Positions 1,976 through 43,016 of a DNA stretch of 45,663 nt are shown piece by piece. This DNA is from Octopus bimaculoides (Eukaryota): NCBI RefSeq assembly GCF_001194135.2, contig NC_068982.1, positions 186,814,915-186,860,577 of the forward strand, in the 5' to 3' direction. The position numbers and the translations under genes were made by a program. The first letter of the stretch is position 1. Each line of letters opens with the position of its first letter. A model generated the notes under the pieces. The model was not told the DNA's origin and ran no database searches. It was given only the letters and a program-made list of their open reading frames with translations.

Positions 1976-4639
1976 CATACATAGAAATGTATATACACAC
2001 ACAGACATTTATGTATAAATGTGTATATCCATCTATATATACATACATACAAATAGATGTATACACACACACACACGAGGAGGCAATGCCTACTACTCCC
2101 TGATATATTATAAGTATCCTCTTAACTGTTGCCATATTTTCATTGCTATTCGAGCGAAGCAGACTCACAGAATATTTCTGAGATAGAAAGACTTGGAGCC
2201 GAAATCAAAACCCAATAACTGACTCTGGTAAATAATATTCTTCTGATATTTATTTATTTAACACACAATTTACCACACATTTACATGGTTAAACATTTAT
2301 GAGACTTATTTCAAACATAAATATACTGTTATATAGATATTATTTAATTTTCACACACCATTTTATAGATTAAACATTGTTGAAACATTTTACAGTGTTA
2401 CATCACAAGTAAAACATTTCATTTCCAGAATATAATATAAAATATAGTTGTGTTATAACTATGTCAAAACTATTTGATGGAAATGTTCATCTAAGGATAC
2501 ATCATTTTAAGTAGTTTAAAGTGGATTTCTAGGTCTCAAGTGAGATTTAAAATTTGTAAATTAATTTTATGGCAGATAAATTAATTGGTTGTTTTTCGTA
2601 AACTTAATTTTTTTTAAACATGGTCGAGAGAGAAGGGCCCTGCATATGACCCTTTCTCTTTCTAGGGTCTTTGACAGTGGTGAGTGGGAGAAAGGCATTC
2701 TCAAGACAAGAGGCCTAACATAAATGCACACAAAAGAGAAATCCTCTGCTAAAAGCAGCTCAGGGGCCAGCTGATGGTGTGAAATTAGGTGATAGATTAA
2801 GTCTGCCACATAGGGTGGCCACAATGGGATTTGAACTCAGATCATAAAGAACCACATTACATACTGCAAGGCATCTTGTCCAGTATTTAATTCTACCACC
2901 TCAAACTAGTATTTAAATTAATGACCCCTGCATAATAAAAGTCCAAGTCGACGTTGCTAGAATTTGAACCTAGAACACAAAGTGTCAGTATAAATACCAT
3001 TCTAATGACTCTACTAATTGATCTTTTTCTTCTTTCAATCAATGAAATTTTTTAAACTGATTTTTTATTTTAATATTAAACTTTGAATATAAATGAAATT
3101 GTTCTGGTGATTTCATTTCTATTTTATATCTTGAAGCAAACAAGAAGAATTGTTTAAATATTAAACAATTTTGTGACAACATATATTTCCTCTCTCAGCA
3201 CATCTTTATTCTACATCAACATTTTAATGTGCAATGCATTAAATATGTTTTCTCACCATCTTCAATATTATTTACCAGATGGATGGCTTCTGAGAATTAC
3301 TTCACATTGTCTGCAGTTATTATAAACTCTATTACAAACCAACAACAAAGTCCCTAAACTACCCCTAAAAACATATTTAATTATGACAACTTATGGAAGG
3401 GTCATGGCTAGAGCGTTTTTTACTATAGCATTGCTAGACAAGAATTAACTTTTAGTTAAACATCAAAAACAGAAACCATAGTTTTAATATATTTTAATCA
3501 AATATATTTCTTTTATTTCAAATATATTTACAGTTTATGAAAATAATTTTAATGTTTTAATATTTCAACTTCATAAATTGTATTTTGGCATTATAAAAGT
3601 TAAACATTCTATTAAATTTTAAAAGATTATATTTTTAATATATTTTTATTAATTACATTTAAATATTGTATTTGAAATAATAATCTATGTTGTAAATTTG
3701 TATATTTCTTCAAAATTAAAGAATTCCAAGGTAACATCAGATATACCAATGAACATACACCTGTGTATAATGTAATCAATCATTTGTTATTAATTAGCCT
3801 AAGTATGACCTGGCTATGTTTCTCTAATGATGCTCGTTTAAACAATAATATATTCATAGAAATCAAACACTAATACAAGTGAACTTATTCATGTAAAAAG
3901 GGGTCAGTTGGCAAAGGCATTAACACATTTTACAAAAAGACTGTTTCCAGTATTTGCTCTGGTGCCCTGAGTTCAATTCCTAGTGAGGGCAGCTTTACTT
4001 TACATTATGATTGATAAAGAACCAATCAAGTACTGGAGTAGATTTGTCATCATTATTGTTGTGTTCATCTTGTTCTCCTTCCCCTTCAACCACTTCTTTT
4101 TTTCTATGTGGAAGACATTGGCAGAGGTTACACATGTAGAGAGAAAGGCTCACCCCCCAGATTTCAAATGTCTTCCAGTCATTCTACATCTTATGTCATC
4201 TGGTTGACCACTTTCGATTTTAAACACAGCCACAGAGGTCAGATCTTCTGAGGCTGTTTTCCAACTTATTTTCCATCAATGTAGACCCAGTGTTTATTTA
4301 CATGCCTCCTCTTCATCCATTTCCTCTTTCATTGTTCTTCTCTTTGTCTATATTATCAAGTCTGCAACAACTGTTGTAGTTGTCCCTACCACTTTTTCAG
4401 CTGTTTAAGGCTCCAGTCTCAAAGACACGCCCATCCAGTCACTGCAGTTGTGCTTCTGTTGTTGCTGTCAACACCAACTCATTGGCCATTCTCAGCATCA
4501 GCTCTGCCACTATAAATCCGTATGGAGTCAGGAGCTGACCTTTCCAGCATCATAAATCACTGCAAAGTGAAAATATTTGCTGATGACACTAAGCTCCAGC
4601 AAAAAATGCTGGGCAAAATGCTTGGCAGCATTTTGGTTG

Positions 4640-4772
4640 TCTTTATGTTCTGAGTTCAAATGTTGCCGATGTCAACTTCTATTCTTTTGAGTTCTGGGGT
4701 TGATGTAATCAACTTACCTGCTCACCTGAAACTGCTGGACTTGTGCTAAAATTTGAAACCATTATTATTATA

Positions 4773-4807
<35 letters not shown>

Positions 4808-5070
4808 TCGTTTGCTGCTACATTATGAGTTCAAATTCTACCAAGGTCGACTTTGCCTTTCATCCTTTTGGGGTCAATAAGTACCAGTTACATACTGGAG
4901 TTGTGTAACTGGTACTTATTCCACCAAATTCTGCCAAGGTCGACTTTGCCTCTCGTCCCTTTGGGATTGATAAAAAAAGAACCAGTTAGGGGCTGGGTCT
5001 GATGTAATCGACTAGTCCCCACACCCAAAATTTCAGGCTTGTGCCTGTAGTAGAAAGGATTATTTTTGTT
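4640..5070 (+). mobile_element. Fragments of a second tRNA-derived SINE family, interrupted by an (ATT)n microsatellite
   Basis: Repeated gagttcaaatt...aggtcgactttgcctttcatcc...ggggtcaataa...gtaccagtt motif, also at 33080-33302 and 38620-38822; (att)n at ~4766-4806. Confidence 0.7.
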
Positions 5071-6974
5071 ATTATCTTCAAAATATCACCAAAAACAGAT
5101 GGGGGCATGGCTGTAAGGTTAAGGAATTCACTTCGCAACTTTGTGGTCTCAGGCTCAGTCCTACTTTGCAGCACCTTAAAGAAGTAACTTCTTCTAATGT
5201 TCCAGGTTGACCCAAGCCTTGTGAGTGGGTTTCGTACAAGGAACTGATAAAGCCTATGGTATATATATATATGTGTGTGTGTGTGTATATTCATGTATGC
5301 ATAGCTACATTTGTACTTGTATGTGTATACATGTGTGTGTGTGTGTGTGTGCATATGTCTACCCATGTCTCCTTGTCTTGACATCAGATGCTAATTATAA
5401 ACAAATGTCACGTCAAACAGTGTCGTTTGTTTGCAGTGTTCCACCAGAAAACATATCCAACCATTGTGCTGTTCATGTTTGAAGAACTTGGTGAAATATT
5501 CTCTTGCTTGAAACCAGGTGAGGATTGGTGAAACTTGTCGAGTGTAGTCATAGACTTGACTGAGTGGGACTCACAAGAACCTGGCAAGGAACAAAACAAA
5601 ATTATGAGAGGGAAAACACAGAAAAGAAAATACATCATCTGATGTATTATAAAGGTTTTGACATCCATCTTCCCTAACTGGCATGGGTAGGACAGTTGAA
5701 GAGGAAGCAGTGAGCCAGAGGACTTTGCTGAGCTCCAATGAAAGATTTGGCAAGATTTCTACAGCTGGATGATCTTCTTAACACCAAATACACACATCCC
5801 TATCACTTACCCCTCTAATACACATAACTTATCATTCACTTCCAATATCACACATCCTTCATATCCCCCATGTTACTGTCACCTGTGACCCTACTGCCAT
5901 GCCCCTATCACCCCTACCTCTATCTTTCATCTCTCAATCACTCTCCCTTCTTTTTACTCTATCTTATTGCTGTAAATCTCTTCTCTTCACCATTCTTCCA
6001 ATGAAACTAGGGATGTTACTGGACCTCCCTGAGTCTGTCCCCAACACTCAACCCCTCCTTTCCATATATTTATTACCCTCATCCCAAGGTATATGTAAAG
6101 CCCAGAGATTGAGGGGAACCTTTAGTTTTGTCAAGGACATGGCAATCGTCTCTAGTGACGGCGCCATAAGATGCACCCAGTGCACATTGTGCAGTGGTTG
6201 GTGTCAGGAAGAGCATCCAGCTGTAGAAAGAAAATCAGAAAATGTAACTTCAGGCAAAATATTCTTTGAACCATCCAACCTATTCCAGCATGGAAAGTGA
6301 GGGTAAAATGATGATCATACATACATATGGATGTATAAATATACATATGTGCATCCTTGTGTATATATTATACACTTTCATTCATATATATGTATGCATG
6401 TGTATATAAATACAAACACAATTAGATTAAAATCTAATATAATTATTATGAGAGTTTTTGTATTAATTCCAATATTATTTTACAGTTGAAATATTTGCAA
6501 TTATCTGGTTTTCTCTTTATAAACTTAGTTGTCAACAACAACACCAATAACAACAACACAGCCTTATCCAGCTTTTTCCAAAAATATATTGTTGTTTAGT
6601 CCATGTATATTCAAAGAGCTGACATCCTGAAGAAGGTCACTTTTACTTTTCATTCTTCCTGGGTTCAGTAGATTAACAGTCATTATTTTATAGACCAAAG
6701 AGGAGGTAGAGGATCATTCTAATGATGATGAGTCACTAGAATGTCATTAAACACCCCACCAATATTTCCTAATCCACCTCACTAAACCCCCAATACTTCA
6801 TAATAAACTCCACCAAGTTATATCTCCTCACCTAACACAAAACCCCTCTTCACCTGCGAAAGCCCTTTTTCATAAAGACCTTTCACCTGCCAAACCCCTT
6901 TTTCATACAAACACGTCTTTCTCATTGCTACCCAAACATTGTCCCTTATATTAAATATAATTTAGGTGAACCTA

Positions 6975-7777: not shown

Positions 7778-8160
7778 ACATGGTATTTCATTATGCAACC
7801 ATAAATTACTGTAAAATATATTAAATCGTTTTATAAGTCAACACCACATTCTATTGTGTTAGCTGTGCTTTTCATATTATTCTTTTGACACCCATGCTAG
7901 CATGGAAAGCGGACGTTAAACGATGATGATGATGATGATGATTCCATAGAAATTATAGTTGGCTCTGATTTTTTGCTAAAACATTTCGTATCAACATGTC
8001 AGATGTAAAGAAGCGATGAGATAAACAATGAGAACAAACAACAGATGTTTTTGTCTTTGATCTCATTGTTTGTTTCCGTCTGACGTTTCGATATGAAATT
8101 TTGTAGCAGGAAATCAGTCCTGGCTATAATTTCTATCGATAATATCTGTANNNNNNNNNN

Positions 8161-11100
8161 GATTAATGAAGAAAACAAAATGTTGGCTCTCATCCCTGCC
8201 ACAGACTGTGATACAACATCGATTTCTAAGGAAACTACATTAATTCTTGCCCAAATATTACACACACGAAACACAAAGAAAACAGAAGAACAGGAAGCAC
8301 AAGACACAAAGAAATCTGAAGAATGGGAAATGTCCATGTTACCAAATTTTCTTCATATTGTGACATGTTACCAAACAATAATCAAAACAGACCACATCAA
8401 TACATTTATAGATTATGTAAAAGATAAGTGTAATCACATGGACTTCATGGGTTTAGATGGATCTTGTATTTTACGTAAAATCAAACGTAAAATGCAAAGA
8501 TTTCTTGAATTTACAAAACAAAATAAGGATTTTGTTCACCAAAACCTTGATTGGTTTCAACAAAGACTCTTTGACATTTATGTCACCTGTAACCCATACA
8601 ACCACAAAGCCATTGATCCACCAAAAATAACCACAAAATTTCGGCCTCTTTGCCCAGTTGTGACCAGAGAAGCAAAGATCAAGGAATCTGGAGAAGAATT
8701 TGACAATAAAAGCACAATAATAGCCAATACCATTATCATACAGGAGGGAGTGGTAACCTATTCCCGCCATTGTATGACAATATGTTGTGTGACAAGAGAC
8801 TGATAGAAATGATGTCCATTGTCCATCTTCTGTCACCAGTTTCACCAGAATCGGTCAAGAGATGGTTCTAGCAACCCTCCCCTTCCAAAAAATGATTCTT
8901 ATTATCAGCCCCACAAGTTTCAAGATTAAAAGAATACAGTTGGGGTTACATTTGGTTGCTTACTTGGAACATTCTACATTTATAGGTGTAGAAATGTTTG
9001 GTAAAACTATTTACCAAATTGATTGGGATGATAAAAGAATTCGACATGAATTCACGACTAAAGAAACACCTACAGATATTGCTGTAGGCATCCAGAATAT
9101 ACTTTTAATTACATTTTCCAGTATTAACAGAGTAATCTGTTATAAGATGGATGGCCAACAGTTATGGGAGGTAGAGACCTATTCTCGGCACCTCCCAAGT
9201 AAAATCTCTCTGTACCAAAGCTATTTCTATGTACTCCAGGGACAAATTATTTATAAAATTTCAGCTAAAGGTAGTGTGACAAAGAGGGACATTGGCAGGA
9301 AATGCCACACTATTTCTGTTGGTAAAAATACCATTTTGGTCACAGATTATTTTGGCAAACCACATGTCATTCAAATAAATAAAGACTTTTGGCCCAAACT
9401 GTTATACAACCACCAGCTACATACCCCCAGTTTGAAAGACAATATTGATATTAAGGATTACTGCAACATTACAAATATTCTACCTATGTCTATATCTTCT
9501 ATATTAATAATTTGCAGAAACAAAAAAGCCAAATTATTCACTGATACTGGGGAAATAATTAACCAAAATAATTTAGTTTTCCTTGAGCTTCCTTCTTTCT
9601 GTTGTAGAATAAACGCAAACAGATTCCTGGTATTTTATCGTGAAATGAAAGGATTTCAGTGTATCACCTGTCCTGAACTAAGAAAAGGTCCTTTAATAAA
9701 GGTCCAAACTGATTACATGAAAATATGTCATATTGTATCAAATAAGTGTTTAGCTGTGACCACCACTGAAAACAAAAATGAGGTCCATATCCTTTTGATC
9801 AACGAAGATAAAGTTGACATTATAGAAAGAGTTTCTCTAGGACATTATAATGTCACCATTGCTGCAACTCCAATTAATTTTGTAGTCGTAAATGGAAGCG
9901 AAAATAAAATGGTATTTTATTCCACATGTGGTGAAGAGCTTTTTCATAAATACCTTCCATTCTATGGCTACCCTCATCGCATCTACTCTGATAATGTTTA
10001 TTTTTATGTCCTCTTCAAGAGACACTCTATTCTGATATGTTATGATATATATGGAGAAACGAAATGGCAGTGGCAACTGCTTTCCCTGTTCACCCTCACA
10101 TTGCTGTTTTCCAAGGAACTGTTTATGTACCGGACACTCAACTCAACAGGATTCTTCTTTACAAGTATCAGGACTGGTCGTCTGGCTGTTGTTTGCACAC
10201 GAGAAATCCTTATATCAGAAATCTAAATATACGACTCAAAGAAAAGGAGAATGACAAAAAACTTGTCATTGGCGAAATATGTAAACTGGCAAATGGACAG
10301 TTGGTGGTGTCCGACATCAACCATGATTGCTTGTTATACATTTCTAATGAAGGAGACATTGTGTCCAGATTATCTCTGCCGTCTACAGCTACAGATATAT
10401 GTCGATGGGATTCTCATCAAATAGGTGTCACATTACCCCTACAGAAACAATTAAGGGTCATCGGAAACCTATCAAAGACAGTGAGAAGTGTATCATTAAG
10501 GCAGCCTTATGTACGGGTGTGTAAGATGGGTGAAGGTGAAATTGTTTGTTATTGTGATAAACCATCACATTTAGATATTTTAGCCATTAAATATTACAAT
10601 CAAGTTGAAACAATTCATAGAATTAATATCCCTTTTTTTGTGAAATCATTATCAAAAGACAAGAAAACAGAAAAGCTATTAATTGTTACTAGGGGAAAAG
10701 CTTTTCAGTACAACACTAGAATAGGTGGTGATGGTCATGGCAGTCATCAGATGGTCCCCAGTGTTTTAATGTCCCAAGTGAAACGTCCCTCCAATCTCTA
10801 TGGTGGATCTATTGACCAAATGTTTGTTTATCTTGTAGACAGCAGTCGTATGTTTGCTATAAACGATCATAATTTGTTGGTTAATGATCTCGTTATAAAT
10901 AATCAATTTAATTATTATATCGACCTGGTAGATGTATTTTCCAGATGCATTTCTGTCAGTGAAATGTTATCTTCTACTTTATATCTACAAGACCTGGCAG
11001 TTTCTGATAAAGCCAAACATATTCATATCCCTAAACATTTGGGAGACACAAGACCATTGTGGATTAATCCTTTGGTAATTACTGAAAATAATCTGATTGC

Positions 11101-13570
11101 AGGATGGGACAAGGAGAATCGAAAATTTAAGATATTCACATTGGATTGTCAACTTTTGGATTCAATTAAATTTAATGATTACTATTATATTAAAATGTGT
11201 CGATGGCAGTCAAACACACTGGTCATTACGGAGAGGGATTATGAAGCTGATGATGATGGTGATGATAAATCCCAACTGTTGACATTAAAAGTGGAATTTC
11301 CATTGTTGTTGGTAATTTACCAAACGAGAAATAAATATGAATACATGGCTTCTTTATCAAACAATCAACTGGTTTGTAGTAAATGGAGAGATAGAAATCA
11401 TTTGTATGTCATTGCTGTTGATGATATACATTCGAATGTGAAGGAAATAAAACAAATAGACATACCTGAACCATTAATATGGAGAAAAGAAGATGGAAAG
11501 TATTCACGTGATGACATTAAGGATATTAATGTTACTGCTGAAGATGTCATTGCTGTCTTAAACATGAGATTTGTCATTTTCTTCAACAGTGATGGTCAAT
11601 ATTTACATTCGGTCACTCACTACATGCGGTTTCATTGCTATGGTGATGATCACAAGATAACATTTGATGGCGGTTTTTTGTACATTCATGGTGAATGGGA
11701 GAAATATTCAGGTTTATTTCAATATCAAAACATTTTGTATTTCACCCAGACTGGGGAATACAAGAAAATATTTTTAAATCAAAGAATTTATAAAGGTCAA
11801 GTATATTTCTTCAGTATAAACTGTAAAGGACCAAGGGTTGTTGGAGTCCCCAAATGGGGATTGAGAGAGGATGAAATGTATGTTGAAGGGTTGTTTATGG
11901 TGAATCAAGAAAGCTTCCCGGTTGCTCGTTTACAAACAGACGAATTTCCTGTTCAAGTAAAAGATTTTGATATTTCTGATGAAGGAAAGACAGTTGTGTG
12001 TGAAAAAGCCAATAATGGAAATGTTAAAATATTTGATGAAGACGGGGAGTTGCTATGTCACAGAAATGTTGCAAGTTTAGTTTGTGGTGTGTGTTTTACA
12101 CAAGAAACACACATAATGACCACGGTTCCTAAAAGAAAAGAAATATTTCAACTGAATGGAAAAGATTTGCAGAAATCTAAAGTTTGGCCAAGTCACATCC
12201 CTTACGGTGTAATATGGAGAAAAGTGGTGGGTATTTACTGGTCTGTCCATATTGAATTGATTGAATGTCATTGCATAAAGATTGATGGGGATCAAACGAA
12301 CATTCTGGAATCTGTGTCGTTATTAAATCTTGATTCTGGTCTTCATTTCCCTTCCATTACATCTGAAACGAACAAGGAAATATTCAGTAATGAATTAATT
12401 AATAAATTGAAGTACAATGGAGGAGATGGAGGAAGAAGAGGTAAATCAGGTGAAATAATTAGTAAAAGTAGTTTAAAGGTGAGATGTGGTAATTACATAG
12501 CGGAGATTAGTAATTCAGGAATTGATGAAATATCAGTGAGGAGACTTCCATATAGAACAGCAATGGTCCCTCTTTCCATTCCTGCATTCAAGGAACCTGT
12601 TACTTATGATTATGAGGACATTAGGGACTAGAACAGTAAACTAATTAAGTTAGATGAGAATGTGAGTGTGTTGATATTTCGAGAAAGTGTCACTTTAATC
12701 AGAACAACAACAACAACAGTGGACATACTTCAACATGAACAACAACAACAATTACCACTGGACATATGTCGGTGGACAGATGAATGTTTCATTGTCGCCT
12801 TTGGTAGAGAAATGAGGGTCTTCAACAGGGATCTCCGTTGTTTAAAAACCATCAGAACTGAGAAATACTACAACAGGATTTATAAATACAACGACAATCA
12901 ACTGGTGTGTGATGGTCATTATATTAGAGACATGACTCAAGAAGAGAGAAACAAGAAATACGGAATTATATGGATGAACAACAAGGATTGCTACATTTGC
13001 AAAGACTCCAACACCTTTGACTCTTATTATGTGGATGTGGTTGATATCAAAGATGGGAAATGTAAAGATGAAGTGTGTCGTGGGGAGACGTGGAGATATT
13101 TAAGGTTGGAAGGAGATGAAGGGGTGGATAATGTGGCAGTCACATCTTTTGGTGATGTTGTTGTTATGAAGAGGGAGAAGGCGGGGTTGCATGTAGCATG
13201 GTGCTCTGATTTGTGTGTTGTGGAATTGTTCAGGGAAAAGTCATTGGTGAGGAAGATAAGAATACTAGGAAGAATGTATTCTACTTCATCATATTATATT
13301 GCAAGACATCATTTAACCACAATTGGTGAATGTGTTTATATAACAGGTGCCGAAAACAATATTTACAAAATACCGCGACTTATTGAAGAGGAAACGTCTG
13401 AAGATAATGAAATCCTGATATCTGAAAAGGATCCAAAATATTTACTCCTCAGTTGGGATGAAAATGAAGTCGTTGAAGTTCTTGGTTTTGATATTTCAGA
13501 AAATTCTTTGATGGTTTTTGGAATTATTCCTGGACGTCAACCTTTTGCTTTCTTTCATTATGACAAATAA
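8161..13570 (+). pseudogene. Disrupted large single-exon gene: helical N-terminal region plus six tandem NHL/TolB-like beta-propeller modules (~1,800 codons)
   Basis: Track ORFs 8093-8803, 8862-10226, 10064-12631 and 12662-13570 join end to end: +1 shift near 8795 (..TICCVT/QETDRNDVHCPSSVTSFTRIG..), -1 shift near 10080 (..KWQWQL/PFPVHPHIAV..), and in-frame TAG at 12629-12631 with the frame continuing NSKLIKLDENVSVLIF. Recurrent blade pattern (LVVSD-N..LLY..G.I..LP..A.DICRW...I.VT). AATAAA overlaps the terminal TAA (13566-13571). The true 5' end is hidden by the gap at 8151-8160. Confidence 0.8.
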
Positions 13571-13817
13571 ATATTTCCAGAAATATTAAACTTCAATCTT
13601 CTTCTTCTTATTATTATTATTGTAAATGGGTTCACCCGGGAATTGAACCTGCATTATATTCTGTACAATAACAATTAGTGTTGTAACATTCCTCAACACA
13701 CTCTCTTTGTGTGTGTGTGTATATTTATATGTAGTATATATACATGTGTTTATATATATACACACATATTTAGGAATGTATAGAAATAAGGCTATAAACA
13801 TAAATATGAATTCACTT

Positions 13818-13851: not shown

Positions 13852-13970
13852 AGGTGCTCCAGCATGGCCGCATTCAAATCACTGAAACAAGTAAAAAAAA
13901 ATGTTTAACAGTTCTGGGATAATTTTGCCGTTTAAATAAAATGTGTATATACATGTGTGTGTATATATAT
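13852..13970 (+). repeat. SINE tail plus unique 3' flank, duplicated at ~17458-17575
   Basis: aggtgctccagcatggcc(g/a)cattcaaatcactgaaa..gtaaaa...taacagttctg(g/a)gataattttg..gtttaaataaaatgtgta is shared, including sequence beyond the SINE tail. Confidence 0.8.
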
Positions 13971-14008
13971 ATGTGTGTGTGTGTATATAATGTTTAAATA
14001 TGCATGTT

Positions 14009-14067
<59 letters not shown>

Positions 14068-14187
14068 NNNNNNNNNNNNNNNNNNNNNNNNNNNNNNNNN
14101 NNNNNNNNNNNNNNNNNNNNNNNNNNNNNNNNNNNNNNNNNNNNNNNNNNNNNNNNNNNNNNNNNNNNNNNNNNNNNNNNNNNNNNN

Positions 14188-14402
14188 GCAAACATTGCAG
14201 ATTAAGCTTTCCCCATTCACTATACGAGCCGTGCGCTTTCGCGCAGCTCGCTTAAGTTCTTCATGCTGGATACGTGCTCTCTCAAAAGTGTCGATCCCCT
14301 CCTTAACCTGCTTCCTCCATCCGTAGTGATGACAGGCATTGTTCTCCCAGTCAGTGTCCTGCATATCACAGGCCTTTAATGAGGACTTGACACAGTCCTT
14401 AA
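14188..14402 (-). mobile_element. RTE (BovB-like) LINE ORF2 C-terminal fragment
   Basis: Minus translation LKDCVKSSLKACDMQDTDWENNACHHYGWRKQVKEGIDTFERARIQHEELKRAARK...LICNVC fits the RTE C-terminus (W.....DR..WR, then a zinc-finger start). Confidence 0.75.
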
Positions 14403-14414
14403 GAGGAAGAAGAA

Positions 14415-14543
14415 GAAGAAGAGGTAAATCAGGTGAAATAATTGGTAAAGGTAGATTAAAGGTGAGATGTGGTAATTACATAGTGAAGATTAGTAGTTCA
14501 GGAATTGATGAAATATCAGTGAGGAGACTGCCACATAGAACAG
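14415..14543 (+). pseudogene. Isolated fragment of a paralogue of the six-propeller gene
   Basis: About 90% nucleotide match by eye to 12432-12560: RRGKSGEIIGKGRLKVRCGNYIVKISSSGIDEISVRRLPHRT vs RRGKSGEIISKSSLKVRCGNYIAEISNSGIDEISVRRLPYRT. Confidence 0.9.
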
Positions 14544-14544
14544 T

Positions 14545-16530
14545 AGGAAAGTCGGACTGGTGGCAATTTACGCCCCCAATAATGGTTAGTCTGAGTATTT
14601 CCGAGACCTAGAAAAGTTTCTTGGTACGTCGTACCCATTGGTTTTGTTAGGAGACTTTAACACCATTCACGATCATCATCGTTATTTAACGTCCGCTTTC
14701 CATGCTAGCAGGGCTTGGACGATCTGACTGAGGACTGGTGAATCAGAAGGCTGCACCAGACTTCAATCTGATCTGGCAGTTTCTACAGCTGGATGCCCTT
14801 CCTAATGCCAACCACTCTGAGAGTGCAGTGGTTGCTTTTACGTGCCACCGGCATGAGGGCCAGTCACTCGGTACTGGCAACGGCCACGCTCAAAATGGTG
14901 TTTTTACGTGCCACCTGCACAGGAGGCAGTCCAGCAGCACTGGCAATGACCTCGCTCGAATGATTTTCTAATGTGCCACCGGCACAAGTGCCAGTAAGGC
15001 GACGCTGATAACGATCACGCTCAAATGGTGCTATATACGGACCACTAGCACGGAAGCCAGACAGCTGCTCTGGCAATAATCACGCTCGGACAGTGCTGTT
15101 AGTGCTCCACTGGCACAGGTGCCAGTCATCGAATACGGTTCAATTACGATTTCGATTTCACTTGCCCCAACCCAATGAAGGAGAGGTTGAGATGGGTGCC
15201 AGTTGTCGAAGTTGGTTTGATTTCGATTTCAAAATCACTTGCCTCAACAGGTCTTTGAAAGCAGAGTTTAGTGTCCAATGAAGTAAAGATATGAATAAGT
15301 GAGCTGGCTGCGTGGATAATGTTGGCTCAAACTCAGATAGGGTACCGAATGCCGGCTTCCGGGATCTACTAAGTCACTTTCAGCTGGTGGATCCATACAG
15401 ACTTGAATTCCCGAACACCCCATTGTGGACATTGGTTAAGTGGTGAGGGGTCTTTTAAGTCATATATAGATAGGATTCTAATTAGAGAAATAGACAGAGA
15501 CATAGCTAAGTGTCCACAATTCCACTTGGTCAGCTACAGTGATCATAAATTGGTCACTTGTAAGCTGAACCTAGATAAGTTACAGAATAGAGGATCCGGT
15601 TACTGGAAACTCAATAAGTCCCTTTTGGCAATTGAGGAGTACAGGACTCGGATTAAGTTACTGATACAGAGGGCTTTAACAGGTACCATCATTAATAATA
15701 AATGGCGGTACACCCTCAAAAGAGCCATTAAATTTGAGTCTGTTAGATATAGCATAGGTTTAGTGGCTAGAGAGCATAAGAGGGAACTAGAACTAGTTGA
15801 GGAAGCTGTGTTGATTGGTAGTGCTGCTCAGGTGAAGGCTAAGAGACTGGAATTAAACCAGCACCTCGAGGCCAAACACATGGGATACTTTATCAGGGCT
15901 AGACTTCATGCAATGGGGAGTGAGGGGATCAATGCTGCTGGATGGGCCCGAGTGGTGGAAACCCAACGTGGAAATGATTCTACAATTCCATCTTTGGAGA
16001 ACCTACAAGGCGAGATTGTGAACGAACCCGATGAGATGTGTAAGGCTTTTCAGGAGGGGCGATGGACCAGATAGTAGGTTGAACCTTTCGGACTTCCTTG
16101 CCGGGCTGCCGCATCTCTCAGGACAGAATGCTGAGTGCTGTGAAGGGTCAATCACACCTGAGGAGGTGAGAGAGGCTATAGCTGACTGCAAAGTTGGTTG
16201 GGCGCCGGGACTTGAAGGTTTGCCTTACGAATTGTACAAAAGCATGCCAGACTTGTTTGGGCAAATGGCTTTCTTTCTAAGCCGTTCTCTATCAAGCGCT
16301 CAGTTTGCCAAGGATGTCCACTCTCGATGATTTTGTATGTGATGGCCCTAGAGCCGTTACTGCGAAAGTTGAGTGGCATCCCGAGGGGGACAGCTGTTTT
16401 CAGCATATGTAGATGACATCACCATTATCGTAACCAAGATGGAACACTTACAGAGGGTAGGTGAAACCAGTAAGGTTTACGAGAAGGTGGCAAGAGCAAA
16501 GGTTAACTGGGAAAAGTCAGTCAGAGAAAA
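14545..16530 (+). mobile_element. L1/Tx1-clade LINE ORF2 remnant (AP endonuclease plus partial RT), interrupted by an RTE-tail repeat at 14672-15290
   Basis: APE motifs LVAIYAPN...LVLLGDFN, IDRILI, SDHKLV, GSGYWKLNKSLL; RT motifs APGLEGLPYELY, QGCPLSMILYVMALEPLLRKL, AYVDDITI, AKVNWEKS. Multiple stops, frameshifts and an internal deletion. Confidence 0.85.
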
Positions 16531-16680: not shown

Positions 16681-17450
16681 GTTCATGAGCACCTGGTAAA
16701 GCTTGGGTACACAAATCGCTCCAATGTTTGGGTACTACATGAGTTGAGTGAGAAGAACCTTTTGGATCGCATTTCCATCTGTGATTCGCTTTATAAATGT
16801 AATGAAAACGTGCCTTTTTTAAAGCAAATTGTGACAGGTGATGAGAAATGGATTATCTACCGAAATGTTCAGAGAAAGCGATCCTGGAGTGAACGACATG
16901 AGCCACCCTTAGTCACCCCCAAAGCGGGTCTTCACCTTAAAAAGGTCTTGCTTTGTGTCTGGTGGGATTGGAAAGGAATTCTGTACTATGAGCTTCACCC
17001 AAGTAACCAGACAATTAATTCTGAGAAATACTGCACACAACTGGATGAGTTAAAAGCAGCAATTCGAGAGAAACGTCCAGAATTGGCCAACAGGAGGGGT
17101 GACCACACGTTTCTTTGGGAACCAGACAAAAATTGCTGCAGCTCGGCTGGGATGTGTTACCCCACCCTCCATATTCACCTTCGGATTTTCACTTATTCAG
17201 GTCTCTGCAGAATAGTCTTAATGGTAAAACTTTCAATTCCTTGGATGACGTAAAAAGATACCTTGATGAATTCTTTGCCATGAAACCACCGCATTTCTGG
17301 GAAGAGAGTATTTTCAAGTTAAAGGAAAGATGGAGATGCATTGTGCAACACAATGGTTCATATTTGGTTGATTAAAAATGTAATGGCAAGTATTTATTGA
17401 CCTTTTTCTTTCCTTTAAACATCGGCAAGAACTTTCCGGACAACCCAATA
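16681..17450 (+). mobile_element. 5'-truncated mariner (DD34D-type) transposon, defective
   Basis: WVLHEL (WVPHEL), IVTGDEKWI, KVLLCVWWD, HPPYSP-SDFHLF; 3' TIR ...actttccggacaacccaa followed by TA (17449-17450). Small deletions remove the FHHDNA catalytic Asp region and DLAP. Confidence 0.9.
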
Positions 17451-18171: not shown

Positions 18172-18213
<42 letters not shown>

Positions 18214-20099
18214 CATATATGCATATATGTATACGTATATATATATATTATATATGCATGTATGTATACGTATATATATATATGTATACGTACATATATA
18301 TTTATACATATACGCATGTATGTATTCTAATGACTGGTCCCAAACCAGTGACTTTCATATCATTGATGCTCCATTAAAACGTAGACGACCGAAAGCAACA
18401 ACGGTAACATAATCAGCAGCAGCAGACGAGAACTACCACCACCACCGCCGCCGTCTACTATTCAAATTGGTGTTATTGACACCGTTGAAACGAATTAAAA
18501 CGCATTTGAACAATTATTTAAAGATATTTGATTAGTTTATTGTTTGAAGTTTAAAAAAAATTTCATAAAACTATGACTCTCCATGTACGATTAGAATTTC
18601 TGTTTTGGGCCTGGAAAATACATATTTTTGACAAAGAAAATCTTTCATTGTAGTTGACGACAAGAAAAGAAAAGGCGCCAAAAATGATGATAATAATCAG
18701 GGGAGGTAATGGGAGAAGCAAGAAACACAGGAGAGGTAAGCAACTTAGCAACAGGCATAAATAAGTTTCAGTAAAGTTGTTAATGTTTATATCATTTGTT
18801 GGCAAACATATTTAACTGAATGTGGACGTAATTTATATTGAAATGACAAATATACGCCACTTTGACGCTATCAAAATATTCCTATATTCTGGACACAAAG
18901 TTTATAAGTAATTATCATTCTACCTTAATTGTAAGTATTGTTATATTGATGCTCGTTTTGAAATCTCCTTGGAAACATCGTCTCCAGTCATGAAATTATT
19001 CCCAACATTCAGNNNNNNNNNNNNNNNNNNNNNNNNNNNNNNNNNNNNNNNNNNNNNNNNNNNNNNNNNNNNNNNNNNNNNNNNNNNNNNNNNNNNNNNN
19101 NNNNNNNNNNNNNNNNNNNNNNNNNNNNNNNNNNNNNNNNNNNNNNNNNNNNNNNNNNNNNNNNNNNNNNNNNNNNNNNNNNNNNNNNNNNNNNNNNNNN
19201 NNNNNNNNNNNNNNNNNNNNNNNNNNNNNNNNNNNNNNNNNNNNNNNNNNNNNNNNNNNNNNNNNNNNNNNNNNNNNNNNNNNNNNNNNNNNNNNNNNNN
19301 NNNNNNNNNNNNNNNNNNNNNNNNNNNNNNNNNNNNNNNNNNNNNNNNNNNNNNNNNNNNNNNNNNNNNNNNNNNNNNNNNNNNNNNNNNNNNNNNNNNN
19401 NNNNNNNNNNNNNNNNNNNNNNNNNNNNNNNNNNNNNNNNNNNNNNNNNNNNNNNNNNNNNNNNNNNNNNNNNNNNNNNNNNNNNNNNNNNNNNNNNNNN
19501 NNNNNNNNNNNNNNNNNNNNNNNNNNNNNNNNNNNNNNNNNNNNNNNNNNNNNNNNNNNNNNNNNNNNNNNNNNNNNNNNNNNNNNNNNNNNNNNNNNNN
19601 NNNNNNNNNNNNNNNNNNNNNNNNNNNNNNNNNNNNNNNNNNNNNNNNNNNNNNNNNNNNNNNNNNNNNNNNNNNNNNNNNNNNNNNNNNNNNNNNNNNN
19701 NNNNNNNNNNNNNNNNNNNNNNNNNNNNNNNNNNNNNNNNNNNNNNNNNNNNNNNNNNNNNNNNNNNNTTTCGAGAGTGGAGAGAAGAGATTCAGAAAAT
19801 TCACACGTCTCTTTATTTTCTCACAACTTTCTGAAATGTTTTTTTTTTTTTCATGAAATTTTCTTTAAATATATTTTAATTGGTGAAGATTACGGTTATA
19901 TTGGAATTCAATATGAAACGGAAAAAACTTGTTGGGCGCGTAAAAATACATACATACTGATACACACGTGTATCTACAAAATGAAACTGAAGTTTCGAAA
20001 AATTTGTGTGACTCAGTATGTATGTAGACGTGCCCAACGTACACATAGGTATTTTTCACATTAAATTCCGATATTATCGTAATCTACACCATCTGAGAG

Positions 20100-20192: not shown

Positions 20193-21769
20193 CTTGTGTG
20201 TGTATGTGTGTGTTAGGACAGTTGATAAATGCAACTCAATGAGTATTTATATTTTTTCAATTGTTAGAACGTCTTTATAAACAAACCCTGAAGCACTGAG
20301 TGAGTTGGTATCTTAGAAATGAAGAAAATCTTGAATGCAGGAAAATAGCTATGTATTCAGGTAAAATATCTTTATGGATGGGCCACCTTTTTTGCGTTTA
20401 TAAGGGTATTTTACCTGATCCTTCAAGCCAGGGGCAGACAGAGTATTAAGAATCCTTGGGCACTACTGTTTACCAGGCGCCTTAGCATTGATTTAGTAGA
20501 GTTGACATGTAGAGTGTGGGCCCTCGGGCAGTATCCAATTGACCGACTGCTCAGTTTGCCCCTGCTACAAGCTGTTTTCAAAACTATTTTTCTCTATTTG
20601 AAATTTTCTTCATTTCACCCCCCACCCCCATTATTTCTACCTGGTACAAACAGTTGTGGGGGTCACCGTGCAACTTGCACAACTGAGTGAGGTGTTGTAT
20701 TGAGGGAGACAGTTCAGTATGTAAGTAGCCCTTTTCTCACACAAAATATAATTATAGGTAACTGTTGCTGAAAGTTTAAATATGGTTGGCTGCGACATGA
20801 ATCGTATAAAAAGAAGAAAAAAAACCCACCTGAGAAGCTTTTCTCTAAAATTTAAGGAAAGAAAATCAGTTTCGAATCGTTTAAGATGTTCTGCAGTTTA
20901 AATGTCTGACCATATTGAATTTTTAATGTAATTCTAGTTGATTGAAAACACTTTTTTAAAAACAGGGATGAAGCCAGCCAACTTATGTGTGGCCTTTCCT
21001 TCTTTGGACACAAAACCCTGCTTGCGAAGACCTGTTGAGGCAAGTGAAATCGAAATCGAAAATCAAACCAAATTCGTTGACTGGCACCCATGCCAACCTT
21101 CCTTCATTGGACACTAAACTCAAGTGAGATCGAAACTGAACCAAATTTGATGACTGGCACCCGTGCCAGTGGAGCACTAACAGCACTACCAGAGCAGCAG
21201 TCTCACTTCTGTGCCGGTGGCACGTAAAAAAAACACCATTTGAGTGTGGCTGTTGCTAGTACTGCCAGACTGGCCCTCGTGCCAGTGAAACGTAAAAAGT
21301 ACCCACTACGCTCTGAGTGGTTGGCATTAGGAAGGGAATCCAGCTGTAGAAATTCTGCCAGATCAGATTGGAGTCTGGTGTAGCCATCTGGTTCGCCAGT
21401 CCCCAGTCAAATCGTCTGGTTCAATTTCGATTTCACTTGCATCAACAGGTCTTCACAAGCAAGGTTTTGTCTCCAAAGAAGGAAAGGTAAAGGCCACGGG
21501 TTATGGTCTCACTTGTCTTGCCGGGTCATATTTCCAAAGGTCTCGGTCACTAGTCATTGCCTCGGTGAGGTCAATGCCATGTTCGAAGGCCGTGCTTCAT
21601 CACCTCATCCCAGGTCTTCCTGGGTCTAACAGAGATCTTTAGATTCTTGGTATTGTTTGTTGAGGACTGAAGAATTTTCCAGCTCTGAAAAGGTAAGCCA
21701 GTCTTTGTGATGCAGTCATTCTGATGCCGAAATAATAATCCTGCTTTTTTTTTTTCTTCTTTGATACAG

Positions 21770-27900: not shown

Positions 27901-29363
27901 TATGTTCTTAACACTAGCTTAATGATAACTAAGTTATTTTACTAAATTCTTTGTTATATTCAAAGTAATTGAAAGAAACACAAAGCATCTCAACAGAAAC
28001 ATGGTAACAAAAGGGTTAAAGAACTTGCATTTATTGATATTCTTTGTTAAATGAATGATTTCAGCTATTTTAATCAGTTAATGGAGCCTCCATGCAATTG
28101 CTTGAAAATCTGCTTGAAACCATAGTTGAATCTCCCTCTAATCACACACTCATATCTTAACACGGCTCCCGAGCCTCATTTTACGTTTTATCTCAGGGTC
28201 CCAATACAATATCTTAATTAATTTTGACATGAGCAGTGTAATATTTTTACACTATACCATATGGGAGGCAAAGGTTACACAGGTAGTGTTAGATACATAT
28301 GTCCCACCAGAGGGTCATGTGGTACCCTAGTTCATATCACATCCTGGATACCACATGACCTACCTGTGACCAATTAAAAATTTTGGGTATTTTCTATTGG
28401 AAAATCTACCAAATAGTATTGGTACAAAAGACTGAGGGGGTGGGGGTGGAGACAGTAGTTCTGTGGTTCAGAAGTTGGGGCGTTTTGGTGAGTGATCCCT
28501 TACCTATAACTTATATGATATTCTGTGGATGTGTTCTAAGATGTCTGGATGTTTGTGGCTGCTGTACCTGATTTAGGAGCCATGCTTCATTTTGGGTCTC
28601 GTTTGAGAATTGCAGGTGTTCAGTAGTTGTTTGGAGTCTGAAGAATTTTCTGGACCAATCTTTGTGAAGCACTCTTTACTCTATTATTTCTATTTTCTTT
28701 GGTACAGATGGCTAATCTTTCTGACAGTTCTGATCTTCAACCTGATTCAGAGCAGATATTTGAAGACATAAGTACCGGTTCTTATAGGAAGCTGCCTCTT
28801 ACCAGTGATTCTCAACAACCTTCCGATAGACCAGCCTACAGTTTTCCTAAACCTAACACACAAGGTAAATTGTTCTTCATCATTCATCATCATTATCATC
28901 GTTTAACATCCGCCTTCCATGCTAGCATGGGTTGGGCGATTTGACTGAGGACTGGCGAACCGGATGGCTGCATCAGGCTCCAATCTGATCTGGCAGAGTT
29001 TCTACAGCTTGGTGCTTTTACGTGCCACCGGCACGAAGGCCACTCACACAGTACTGGCAACAGCCAACCTCAAAATGGTGTTTTTTACGTGCCACCTGCA
29101 TGGATGATTTTCTAACATGCTAGAAGGCAACACTGGTAAACAATTACGCTCAAATGGTGCTTATATATATATATATATCACTCTCTGAGTGGTTGGCGTT
29201 AGGAAGGGCATCCAGCTGTAGAAACTCTGCCAAATCAGACTGGAGCCTGGTGTTGCCATCCGGTTTCACCAGTCCTCAGTCAAATCGTCCAACCCATGCT
29301 AGCATGGAAAGCGGACGTTAAACGATGATGATGATGATGATGATGATATATATATAGATGATG

Positions 29364-29396
<33 letters not shown>

Positions 29397-31065
29397 CACA
29401 CTATCTCTGTTACAGTATGATATTTGAAATGTCTGTATGCCATTTTTAATCATCATAATTATATAGAAACCAGTGTTTCTCAACTAATTTTTACTTATCG
29501 ATCCCTTAGATTTCTGTTTTACTCTCCTTTTCAGCGCCGTTGGATGTTTAAAAAAAATCCTGTCACATCTTTATAATTAAATACTTTTAGGAATTGTATA
29601 AAATAAGTGTTAAAATATTTTGTGTCTTGTCGAAGTATCAGCAATTTATTGTAGATAAATTCTAATGGCAAAATTTTACATGAACCCTTGTTGAGAACGA
29701 CTGATTTAAAGGTATATTTTGTATTTCGTTGATATCTTTCCAGCTTTAATGACTGCTTTGAGAAGTTTTGAGAAGCAGATGAAGAATCTAGAATCTGAGC
29801 TTAATCTCGCTATGAGTCGCAATAAACAACTCCTCTCTGAAGCAGATGCTTACAAAAACTGTCCACAAAACAAGGCTGGGAAGGAAACATTTGAAGACTT
29901 GGCACCTCAGCAGAGTGGTAAGTAGCCTCTGTTGACAATTGACTCTTTCCATTTTCAGTATTTTAATGTTATATCCTTGTGCCTCCAATATTGTAGTATT
30001 GTTGATATTGTCGACAATAAATAAAGAATACACTGTAACAGTGTTATAACAATACAAAATAGAAACAATTGCAGTAACAAACATGCAAAGAAGAATCAAC
30101 AATCAATATTTCCAACACATTAACTTGAACTGTAAAAACTGCCCACTACATCAGACTGCTACTATTTATATGAATTGGTCCCATCTGTTCCATTGAAAGG
30201 GTGCTGTAGTCTTGCCACAACATCTAATAACATCAACATTCAAGCGAGGTCGTTGCCAGCGCCGCTGGACTGACTCCTGTACAGGTGGCACATAAAAACA
30301 CCATTTGAGCGTGGCTGTTGCCAGTACCGCCTGACTGGCCCTCGTGCTGGTGGCATGTAAATGCACCCAATACTCTCTCGGAATGGTTGGCGTTAGGAAG
30401 GGCATCCATCTGTAGAAACTCTGCCAGATCAGACTGGAGCCTGGTGCAGCCATCTGGTTTCACCAGTCCCCAGTCAAACAGTCAAACCGTCCAACCCATG
30501 CTAGCATGGAAAGCAGACGTTAAATGATGATGATGACGAAAATGAGACGCCAGTTTTTCTTATGATTGCTACATTACAGACATAGACAAAAGCCCTAAAA
30601 ACTACTTCTTTTGGATCTTTAAAAATTTCTCTTATATCATGATTGACAAATAATAACTTTAATCTCATCTATGCTGTTCAACCTAAACAGTTTTCCTAAC
30701 GATGTGACTCGAGTGCCTCAACAGCTCATGCCCCTCACACCTGACCTCACCTGAATCTCCACTTTTATATTACAGAACCTGAAGAAAAAAGATCATCAGT
30801 GACTACCACTAAACAGAAGGTCGATCAAGTAAGTATTCTATTGATTTAACATTGATTTGTGCTACAAGAATTGAATCTGTTTTAGAACCCATGTAATTAT
30901 CTATATTTTGGAAACCAGTGGCTGTTTGGTAAGAAGTTTGCTTCTCAGCCACATGGTTCTGGGTTCAGTCCTACTGCATAGCACCTTGAGCAAGTGTCTT
31001 CTATAGCCTCAGGCCAACCAAAACCTTGTGAGTGGATTCGGTAGACAGAAACTGTAAGAAACCTG

Positions 31066-36551: not shown

Positions 36552-36607
<56 letters not shown>

Positions 36608-42481: not shown

Positions 42482-43016
42482 TTAACCCTCTAGCATTCAA
42501 ACTGGACATATCTGGCCCAAATATTCCACATGTTTTATGTTCAAACTGACCAAATCCAGCCTCTTATACATAGCCTACAATGTCATGTTAAAAATGAGCA
42601 ATCACATCATTGAAATCTCAGAGCTATGAGATAAAGCATGATTGATTCAAGACATCATCGTTTAACGTCCGTTTTCCATGCTGGCATGGGTTGGACGGTT
42701 TGACTGGGGTCTGGGAAGCCAGGTGGCTGCACCAGGCCCCCCAATCTGATCTGGCAGTGTTTCTACAGCTGGATGCCCTTCCTAATGCCAACCACTCCGA
42801 GAGTGTAGTGAGTGCTTTTTACATGCCACCGGCACAGAAGCCAATCAGCCACGTTTGGATGGTGCTTTTTACATGCCACCGGCACAGGGGTCACAACTAC
42901 AGTTTCCATTTGATCATTGAAATCTCAGAGCCTTGAGACAATGCATGATTGATTCAAATCCATGTGAATAAATAAGCATTACATTGGTCAGAGTAATCTG
43001 AATGCTAAAGGATTAA
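42482..43016. mobile_element. piggyBac-type MITE carrying an RTE-tail repeat insertion (42653-42912)
   Basis: ttaa|ccctctagcattca ... tgaatgctaaagga|ttaa; TIR 12/14. Confidence 0.7.

What the first reader, a model, noticed from the sequence alone, without database searches (positions are those of the whole stretch)
8161..13570. Intronless giant gene with six tandem mollusc-type NHL/TolB-like propellers
Seen: six homologous ~230-310-aa modules start near 8711, 9465, 10265, 11060, 11954 and 12632. Each has a hydrophobic strand-G-strand pattern and a second-blade motif (SFTRIG, FCCRIN, DICRWD, KMCRWQ, GVCFTQ, DICRWT), after a helical region of about 180 aa. Established: a single divergent propeller of this kind ends many mollusc TRIM/B-box proteins, an expanded, often immune-associated family. 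Inference: a six-propeller string in one exon could be a lineage-specific multivalent recognition scaffold. I do not recognise it as a named protein.
Basis: partly seen in the sequence, partly recalled or inferred. Interest (0 to 1): 0.7.

Follow-up and report, generated by a model that had tools for sequence, protein, structure and literature searches.

The report
Disabled octopus six-propeller NHL-like gene
This is a broken copy of a large, octopus-only, intron-free gene family whose 1,800-residue proteins string together six NHL-type beta-propellers, an architecture with no named counterpart and signs of fast adaptive change in two of the six propellers.

Summary
Window 8161-13570 is one collinear reading frame of about 1,800 codons, broken by a 2-bp deletion (after 8800), a 1-bp deletion (after 10079) and a TAG (12629-12631). 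Its start codon is hidden in the 10-N gap. It is 80% identical end to end to intact single-exon 1,801-aa Octopus proteins. The family was found only in Octopus species and Argonauta, is annotated only as 'uncharacterized', mostly lacks Pfam hits, and has at least 20 copies on one O. vulgaris chromosome.

The six modules are real. AlphaFold2 models them as all-beta propeller domains; three clearly have 24 strands, and M3, M5 and M6 are less clear. Foldseek matches multi-propeller arrays. A library-wide HMMER search links modules 3 and 4 to the C-terminal domain of mollusc RING/B-box proteins, and that domain matches canonical NHL structures.

No family member has a RING or B-box, so it is not a TRIM. 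Modules 4 and 6 show pN/pS of about 2.5 between intact paralogues.

Best reading: a probable pseudogene of an octopod-specific, cytosolic, multivalent NHL-propeller scaffold. Its function is inferred, not shown.

The parts
8151..8160 (.). 10-N assembly gap that hides the start codon and about 400 bp of upstream sequence
   Evidence: Window 8149 aligns to L001 9596 and window 8161 to L001 10009. The P0001 gene starts at L001 10001 (ATG GAA AAA ATT...), so ATGGAAAA falls in the gap.
8162..8710 (+). N-terminal region (aa 1-183): disordered Lys/Glu-rich head, helices at aa 53-143 (nt about 8318-8590), then a disordered linker
   Evidence: AlphaFold2 gives H60-95, H100-120 and H129-143 at pLDDT 60-75. 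hhalign finds no similarity to the modules or to TRIM RBCC regions.
8711..9464 (+). Propeller module 1 (aa 184-434), interrupted by frameshift lesion 1
   Evidence: AlphaFold2: all-beta, about 23-24 strands, pLDDT 75-85. hhalign to the mussel TRIM-like propeller P0068: 59%. dN/dS 0.3-0.4.
8799..8802 (+). Lesion 1: 2-bp deletion after 8800 relative to the intact paralogue (GAGAC--TGATAG vs GAGACAGTGACAG); the frame shifts from 2 to 0
9465..10264 (+). Propeller module 2 (aa 435-700), interrupted by frameshift lesion 2
   Evidence: AlphaFold2: 24 strands, pLDDT 79-88. dN/dS 0.4-0.5.
10078..10081 (+). Lesion 2: 1-bp deletion after 10079 (CTG-CTTTCC vs CTGCCTTTCC); the frame shifts from 0 to 2
10265..11059 (+). 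Propeller module 3 (aa 701-965), the most conserved module; carries the DICRWD...TLPLQKQL motif shared with mollusc TRIM-NHL proteins
   Evidence: hhalign 94.6% and 95.7% to P0065 and P0069. HMMER profile hits cover profile positions 592-716. AlphaFold2 job 2: aa 701-899 at pLDDT 75-86; aa 901-948 is conserved but unmodelled.
11060..11953 (+). Propeller module 4 (aa 966-1263), fast-evolving and acidic
   Evidence: AlphaFold2: 24 strands, pLDDT 75-91. hhalign 95.5% to the cuttlefish TRIM-NHL P0066. pN/pS 2.29 between P0001 and P0002, p=0.013. pI 5.4.
11954..12628 (+). Module 5 (aa 1264-1488), short: four modelled blades plus a disordered insert at aa 1388-1440
   Evidence: AlphaFold2. hhalign 70% to P0066. 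dN/dS 0.36-0.87.
12629..12631 (+). Lesion 3: in-frame TAG where intact paralogues have CTG (Leu) or CGG (Arg)
12632..13570 (+). Propeller module 6 (aa 1490-1801) and the natural stop codon (13568-13570); fast-evolving and acidic
   Evidence: AlphaFold2: about 27 strands, pLDDT mostly 75-93. hhalign 83% to M3 and to M4. pN/pS 2.70 between P0001 and P0002, p=0.014.
14405..14543 (+). Orphan 139-bp fragment of a family gene (equivalent to 12429-12560, module 5), 92-93% identical, with non-homologous flanks

Best explanation
SHOWN. The region is a full-length but disabled copy of an octopod-restricted, single-exon gene family. It carries two frameshifts and one nonsense codon, and its start codon lies in an assembly gap. 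The proteins are about 1,800 aa: a short helical N-terminal region followed by six tandem beta-propeller modules. The modules are homologous to one another and, through mollusc RING/B-box proteins, to canonical NHL propellers. The family itself has no RING or B-box. It has expanded by segmental duplication, with at least 20 gene models on one 29-Mb O. vulgaris chromosome. Modules have been exchanged between paralogues. Modules 1, 2, 3 and 5 are under purifying selection. Modules 4 and 6 show an excess of amino-acid change between intact paralogues.

INFERRED. The intact proteins are soluble and cytosolic, because no signal peptide or membrane segment was found. They act as multivalent binding scaffolds, with each propeller offering a binding face, as in TRIM-NHL proteins. 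The conserved, basic propellers 1-3 bind a constant partner (RNA or protein). The variable, acidic propellers 4 and 6 set a rapidly changing target specificity, as expected for a recognition or genetic-conflict (for example immune) function. The helical N-terminus may mediate self-association. The window copy itself is most likely a recent pseudogene.
For: - Collinear 80% identity to the intact P0001, and 40 family hits, all from Octopus.
- Only 33 clusters (at 50% identity) in 1.84 billion representatives; full-length members only in Octopus spp. and Argonauta hians.
- Single-exon genes.
- Lesions mapped against the intact gene; the other net indels are all multiples of 3.
- Module homology.
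- AlphaFold2 propeller models: M1, M2, M4 and M6 at pLDDT 75-93; job 2 pTM 0.60.
- Foldseek top hits are multi-propeller arrays: LRP2/megalin, DDB1, IFT-A, at E 1e-18 to 1e-14.
- Link to mollusc TRIM-like propellers, and from those to NHL structures.
- The octopus-only stacked-module profile hits TRIM2 NHL at 7e-4 and Brat at 2e-3.
- dN/dS and Fisher tests.
- Mosaic dS: M1 0.72 against 0.02-0.06 elsewhere for P0001-P0002.
- Flank comparison argues for segmental duplication, not a mobile element.
- No hydrophobic segment; basic versus acidic module pI.
Against: - No functional, expression or binding data exist.
- Direct sequence evidence for NHL is borderline. The full-length family profile gives only E=1.5 to TRIM71, and the stacked profile also hits designed WD repeats.
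- Blade number is uncertain for M3, M5 and M6, and model coordinates could not be inspected.
- The dN/dS>1 result rests on one pair of intact paralogues with low dS (0.02-0.04). The modules were singled out after looking, and gene conversion can distort such estimates.
- Variable sites are only weakly enriched in loops.
- The lesions could be assembly errors. Relaxed constraint on the window lineage is only suggestive (p=0.07).
Confidence: 0.65

Rival explanations
1. The window copy is a functional gene, and the three lesions are assembly or sequencing errors. The scaffold is gap-rich, with a 10-N gap right at the start codon.
For: The window has seven N gaps. Both frameshifts sit in short repeats (CC; ACAG/TGACAG). 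Overall dN/dS of window vs P0001 (0.77) is not far from the intact-intact value of 0.61. Every other net indel is a multiple of 3.
Against: Three independent disabling changes in 5.4 kb is a lot for base-level error. The TAG needs two substitutions from CTG or CGG. Private changes in the normally constrained modules lean towards neutrality: 91 nonsynonymous to 29 synonymous, against 33 to 21 in the intact copies. No database protein equals any window ORF.
Confidence: 0.2
2. The modules are propellers of another class (WD40-like or YWTD/LDL-receptor class B), and the resemblance to NHL is convergent blade chemistry.
For: The Foldseek top hits are YWTD and WD40 arrays. The octopus-only profile's best PDB hit is a designed WD-type repeat protein. 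The direct family-profile hit to TRIM71 is not significant.
Against: The Foldseek ranking is driven by multi-domain length, not blade type. The WD hits are sums of eight identical designed repeats, each insignificant on its own. Full-domain, in-register profile matches go to proteins whose propellers match solved NHL domains at 1e-11 to 1e-25. The modules are 225-310 aa with about 24 strands, not the seven WD blades of more than 300 aa. There are no EGF linkers and no signal peptide, as YWTD arrays would have.
Confidence: 0.1
3. The 5.4-kb intronless multicopy ORF belongs to a mobile element, and the family is selfish DNA rather than a host gene family.
For: It is multicopy and intronless and sits in transposon-rich DNA (mariner and LINE fragments nearby). 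Some gene models are fused to DUF4371 or zinc-finger domains.
Against: No similarity to any transposase, reverse transcriptase, integrase or helicase. Young paralogues share more than 13 kb of patchy flanks without sharp ends, while older paralogues share only the coding region. Divergent members have 1:1:1 orthologues at 90% identity or more in three Octopus species, on other chromosomes. Purifying selection acts on four modules.
Confidence: 0.04

Closest known systems
Mollusc RING/B-box (TRIM-like) proteins with a C-terminal divergent NHL propeller, e.g. Acanthosepion pharaonis CAE1315789.1 (P0066) and Potamilus streckersoni KAK3588083.1 (P0068)
   Same: The propeller domain is homologous over its full length. 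It shares the blade-1 'vvsD..n..l..f...G' pattern and the blade-2 'P.DIC.W....VtLP..kqL' motif.
   Different: Those proteins are 280-660 aa with one propeller behind a RING, B-box and coiled coil. The octopus family has six propellers, no RING or B-box, and an unrelated helical N-terminus.
Canonical TRIM-NHL proteins (TRIM2, TRIM3, TRIM71/LIN-41, Brat, Mei-P26, Thin/TRIM32)
   Same: A six-bladed NHL-type propeller used as a binding platform for RNA or protein. Linked by intermediate-sequence homology and weakly by direct comparison.
   Different: They have a single propeller and E3-ligase RBCC modules, and are conserved across animals. Here the ligase part is absent, there are six propellers, and the family is lineage-restricted and fast-evolving.
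Multi-propeller array proteins (LRP2/megalin and LRP4 YWTD arrays, DDB1, IFT-A subunits)
   Same: Several propellers in one chain; these are the best Foldseek matches for both models.
   Different: No detectable sequence homology except weak YWTD/NHL superfamily signals. LRPs are secreted or membrane proteins with EGF and LDL-A modules. DDB1 and IFT proteins use seven-bladed WD-like propellers.

Membership tests
NHL-repeat beta-propeller (Pfam PF01436 / six-bladed TolB-like superfamily) | Significant direct sequence match to known NHL domains | tested here: inconclusive
   The full-length family profile against PDB gives a best hit of TRIM71 NHL at E=1.5. The stacked octopus-module profile gives TRIM2 NHL 7e-4 and Brat 1.8e-3, but also hits designed WD repeats. 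Precomputed Pfam hits are absent for most members.
NHL-repeat beta-propeller (Pfam PF01436 / six-bladed TolB-like superfamily) | Homology to bona fide NHL domains through intermediate sequences | tested here: met
   M3 and M4 match P0065, P0066, P0067 and P0069 at hhalign 92-96%, and by HMMER at E 6e-6 to 5e-4 library-wide. P0066 matches TRIM3 and TRIM2 NHL at 1.6e-11, and P0065 matches TRIM71 at 6e-6. The joint profile matches NHL structures at 8e-25 to 4e-15.
NHL-repeat beta-propeller (Pfam PF01436 / six-bladed TolB-like superfamily) | Six four-stranded blades per domain | tested here: inconclusive
   DSSP strand counts on the AlphaFold2 models: M1 about 23-24, M2 24, M4 24 (met). M3 has about 19 plus an unmodelled conserved stretch, M5 has 16, and M6 has about 27.
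TRIM / RBCC E3 ligases | N-terminal RING finger | tested here: not met
   No Cys/His RING pattern in any full-length member, including Argonauta and the divergent Octopus members. The N region against the P0066, P0065 and P0068 RBCC regions gives hhalign probability below 1%.
TRIM / RBCC E3 ligases | B-box zinc finger(s) | tested here: not met
   Same evidence as for the RING. Intact genes are single-exon and start 8 nt before window 8161.
TRIM / RBCC E3 ligases | Coiled-coil region before the C-terminal domain | tested here: inconclusive
   Helices at aa 53-143 are predicted, but no homology to TRIM coiled coils was found. PDB matches are only non-significant hits to helical proteins.
Pseudogene (unprocessed, duplicated copy) | Disabling lesions relative to intact paralogues in an otherwise collinear copy with homologous flanks | tested here: met
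   Two frameshifts and one nonsense codon. The flanks are collinear with the P0001 locus. Sequencing error was not excluded.
Transposable-element ORF | Element-type enzymes, or defined termini shared by all copies | tested here: not met
   No such domains. Flank homology is patchy and depends on paralogue age.

The most novel reading that the evidence does not exclude
The family is an octopod-specific intracellular recognition system. It would be a chromosome-scale cluster of single-exon genes encoding six-propeller NHL scaffolds. Propellers 4 and 6 would act as specificity determinants, diversified by positive selection and by gene conversion between paralogues. This would be a functional analogue of TRIM5- or NLR-type arms-race families, but built without an E3-ligase or NTPase module.
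Probability: 0.2. Interest if true: 0.8.

Novelty: new variant of a known kind. Interest (0 to 1): 0.55.

Why it matters
Cephalopod genomes are known for lineage-specific gene expansions whose roles are mostly unexplained. This family combines several features that usually mark recognition or conflict genes: about 1,800 aa from a single exon, dozens of copies, a range restricted to octopods, a known binding fold (the NHL propeller) in an undescribed six-fold tandem arrangement, and a mix of conserved and fast-evolving propellers. If so, it offers a new architecture for multivalent recognition in an animal group without adaptive immunity. It also gives a clean case of a domain escaping from its TRIM context and being multiplied. 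For this window alone the practical message is more modest: it holds a decayed member of the family.

Tried and rejected
1. Second and third homologous-protein searches. The profile of modules plus TRIM-like domains returned only short Octopus fragments. The divergent member P0046 returned only itself and one relative. Neither gave Pfam labels for the TRIM-like relatives.

2. The 120-nt GT...AG stretch at 12441-12560. I considered an in-frame intron or mobile 'introner', because an orphan copy lies at 14405-14543. Rejected: the segment is conserved as protein in all paralogues and is kept in RefSeq models. The second 'orphan' (L003 4911-5045) turned out to be part of a larger gene copy.

3. 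Transposon-encoded ORF. Rejected on the flank comparison.

4. N-terminal region as a remnant of the TRIM coiled coil. No support.

5. Enrichment of variable sites in loops versus strands. Only weak: odds ratio 1.7-1.9, p=0.02-0.09 in M4 and M6.

6. Exact look-up of the 855-aa window ORF to identify the source assembly. Not on record.

7. Four literature searches, including RefSeq LOC identifiers. Nothing found on this family.

8. Rfam and tRNA scans of the window. Nothing found.

9. Foldseek on whole multi-domain models cannot separate NHL from YWTD or WD40 propellers, and single-domain models could not be cut out.
Full report
THE SEQUENCE

The window is gap-rich eukaryotic DNA with seven runs of N. 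Between 8084 and 13570 on the + strand there are four long open segments:
- 8084-8800, frame 2
- 8793-10223, frame 0
- 10046-12628, frame 2
- 12632-13567, frame 2, separated from the previous segment by a single TAG

Joining them at the two frame changes gives about 1,801 residues. tblastn of this protein back onto the window finds nothing else except a 39-residue fragment at 14426-14542.

RELATIVES

A search of 5.8 billion proteins returned 40 clusters. All are from Octopus vulgaris, O. sinensis or O. bimaculoides, and all are named 'uncharacterized' or 'hypothetical'. Nearly all lack any precomputed Pfam hit. Many are 1,700-1,900 aa, and the best, P0001, is 1,801 aa.

- The joined window protein aligns collinearly with these proteins from the first to the last residue, at 80% identity to P0001.
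- At least 20 of the O. vulgaris models lie on one 29.19-Mb chromosome record, OX597841.1. The three looked up sit at 9.57, 21.9 and 22.66 Mb, one of them with a paralogue 5 kb downstream.
- An exhaustive HMMER profile search (aa 90-1263) of 1.84 billion representatives found only 33 clusters. Full-length members occur only in Octopus and in Argonauta hians.
- Two divergent members have 1:1:1 orthologues in the three Octopus species on other chromosomes.
- The family is therefore octopod-restricted as far as these databases show.
- I found no paper on it.

GENE STRUCTURE AND LESIONS

The genes for P0001, P0002 and P0019 are exactly (aa+1)x3 bases long, so they are single-exon.

The window is collinear with the P0001 locus at 88.8% nucleotide identity over 8161-13699. 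Patches of flank homology lie upstream at 2181-3707, 4606-5075 and 7936-8149.

Against that intact gene the window has:
- a 2-bp deletion after 8800;
- a 1-bp deletion after 10079;
- TAG at 12629-12631, where paralogues have CTG or CGG.

Apart from one +1/-1 pair four bases apart at 12611-12615, which cancels out, every other indel inside the ORF is a multiple of three.

The intact gene starts with ATG GAA AAA, 8 nt before the position equivalent to window 8161. The start codon and about 400 bp of upstream DNA are therefore inside the 10-N gap. The short open stretch upstream of the gap is not coding in the homologue.

Changes private to the window copy in the normally constrained modules 2, 3 and 5 are 91 nonsynonymous to 29 synonymous. 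The two intact copies together have 33 to 21 (Fisher p=0.07). That is a weak sign of relaxed constraint.

I read the window copy as a recent pseudogene. Sequencing error cannot be excluded; I put it at about 0.2.

THE SIX MODULES

Profile-profile comparison shows in-register homology:
- M3-M6 and M4-M6: 83% probability, E about 9e-6
- M2-M4: 40%
- M4-M5: 24%
- M1-M2: 55%, shifted, as expected for internally repeated blades
- The N region matches nothing.

In a stacked alignment of the modules the six motifs fall in one column.

AlphaFold2 with the family alignment gave two models.

Job 1 (aa 1-1000):
- Helices at aa 53-143.
- M1 (189-404) and M2 (436-667) are all-beta with about 24 strands each, at pLDDT 75-88.
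- M3 failed.

Job 2 (aa 690-1801 without the stop, with more divergent members added; mean pLDDT 69.9, pTM 0.60, all five models 61-70):
- M3: aa 701-899 at pLDDT 75-86, about five blades. The invariant stretch 901-948 is unmodelled.
- M4: 24 strands, pLDDT 75-91.
- M5: 16 strands (four blades) around a disordered insert.
- M6: about 27 strands.

In every module the motif lies on the first strand of the second blade.

Foldseek of both models against the PDB returns multi-propeller arrays: IFT-A, DDB1, LRP4, and LRP2/megalin at the top for M3-M6, with E from 1e-18 to 1e-14. TM-scores are low because the queries are multi-domain. These searches confirm 'propeller array' but cannot tell propeller classes apart.

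WHICH KIND OF PROPELLER

The exhaustive profile search also gave weak but library-wide significant hits (E 6e-6 to 5e-4) to short proteins outside the family:
- P0066: cuttlefish, 656 aa, with RING, B-box, coiled coil and propeller
- P0068: freshwater mussel, 467 aa
- P0065: two B-boxes plus a propeller
- P0067 and P0069

hhalign of the module profiles against these propeller domains covers the whole domain in register:
- M3-P0065: 94.6%
- M3-P0069: 95.7%
- M4-P0066: 95.5%
- M4-P0067: 91.8%
- M5-P0066: 70%
- M1-P0068: 59%
- M2 and M6: about 30%

These intermediate proteins are genuine TRIM-NHL relatives:
- The N-terminus of P0066 matches the TRIM28, TRIM2 and TRIM3 RBCC regions (2e-14). Its propeller matches the NHL domains of TRIM3 and TRIM2 (1.6e-11), Thin, TRIM71 and Brat.
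- P0065 matches the TRIM71 NHL domain (6e-6).
- P0068 matches the teneurin NHL domain (1e-6).

A joint profile of M3, M4 and the five intermediates hits NHL structures at 8e-25 to 4e-15, but that signal comes mainly from the intermediates.

Direct evidence is thin. The full family profile gives E=1.5 to TRIM71. A profile of octopus modules alone gives TRIM2 NHL 7e-4 and Brat 1.8e-3, beside artefactual hits to designed WD repeats.

I therefore file the modules as divergent NHL-type propellers by transitive homology. The protein is not a TRIM. No member has a RING or B-box, and the N region shows no similarity to RBCC regions.

HOW THE FAMILY EVOLVES

Pairwise Nei-Gojobori estimates used the window, P0001, P0002 and P0019.
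- Overall dN/dS is 0.55-0.77.
- M1 and M2 give 0.3-0.5.
- Between the two intact O. vulgaris paralogues, M3 and M5 give 0.36-0.49.
- Between the same pair, M4 gives pN/pS 2.29 (p=0.013) and M6 gives 2.70 (p=0.014). Combined they give 2.46 (p=0.0012). This is a post hoc selection of modules at low dS.
- dS is mosaic. For P0001-P0002 it is 0.72 in M1 against 0.02-0.06 elsewhere, which indicates exchange of modules between paralogues.

Young paralogues share more than 13 kb of patchy flanking DNA. An older paralogue shares only the coding region. That fits segmental duplication of a host gene and not a mobile element.

A hydropathy scan shows no membrane or signal segment. M1-M3 are basic (pI 8.6-9.1) and M4-M6 acidic (pI 5.4-6.1).

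INTERPRETATION

Shown:
- the architecture;
- the restricted taxonomic range;
- the single-exon structure;
- the lesions;
- the link to NHL propellers;
- the uneven selective pattern.

Inferred:
- A cytosolic multivalent scaffold in which conserved basic propellers hold a constant partner. TRIM-NHL propellers bind RNA or proteins (established knowledge of Brat, LIN-41 and TRIM2/3).
- The fast-evolving propellers 4 and 6 supply changing specificity, as in recognition or conflict gene families.
That these are 'immune-associated' rests on general knowledge and was not tested.

VERDICT

It is wrong in expecting upstream RING, B-box or NTPase exons, over-confident about six blades in every module, and silent on the point that this copy is probably dead. 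The family is an undescribed architectural variant of a known fold, and is moderately interesting.

Noticed in passing
window 14405-14543 (+): An orphan 139-bp piece of a family gene, equivalent to 12429-12560 in module 5. It is 92-93% identical, has unrelated flanks, and sits next to a LINE-like ORF remnant on the opposite strand (13879-14364) and an N gap. Its origin is unexplained; it could be the remnant of a degraded neighbouring copy or a captured fragment.
   Followed up: partly
window 16744-17250 (+): Fragment of a mariner-type transposase. It matches the Mos1 transposase catalytic domain at E 4e-25 and SETMAR at 1e-24.
   Followed up: yes
window 15403-16074 (+) and 13879-14364 (-): ORFs that look like LINE endonuclease/reverse-transcriptase remnants by eye. 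The first gave no significant PDB sequence match, so the call is unconfirmed.
   Followed up: partly
window 14672-15029, 21209-21416, 28879-29389, 30234-30545, 34255-34792, 36585-36768, 40912-41472, 42653-42888 and others: A short interspersed repeat of about 380 bp, matching L001 7470-7854, recurs at least a dozen times in the window in both orientations at 72-95% identity. A second repeat, matching L001 about 18500-19400, also recurs. The locus is repeat-dense.
   Followed up: no
L003 (O. vulgaris OX597841.1, 21.89-21.93 Mb): The P0014 gene model spans 22.9 kb with introns and has a different N-terminus from P0001. A further 1,783-aa paralogue lies 5 kb downstream, and another family fragment lies upstream on the opposite strand (L003 4911-5045). 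The family has two N-terminal types (MEKINEENK... and M..QT.NTSRKL...), possibly from alternative 5' exons or from gene-model fusion.
   Followed up: partly
stitched protein aa 901-948 (window about 10865-11008): The stretch YIDLVDVFSRxIxxSEMLSSTLYLQDLxVSDKA is among the most invariant in the whole family. AlphaFold2 nevertheless leaves it unstructured or weakly helical between modules 3 and 4. It could be the missing sixth blade of module 3 or a conserved linear motif.
   Followed up: no
window 13950-14067, 18172-18300 and 1523-1600: TA/CA-type microsatellites (translated as YIYIYI / THTHTH) flank several assembly gaps. This probably explains why the assembly broke there.
   Followed up: no
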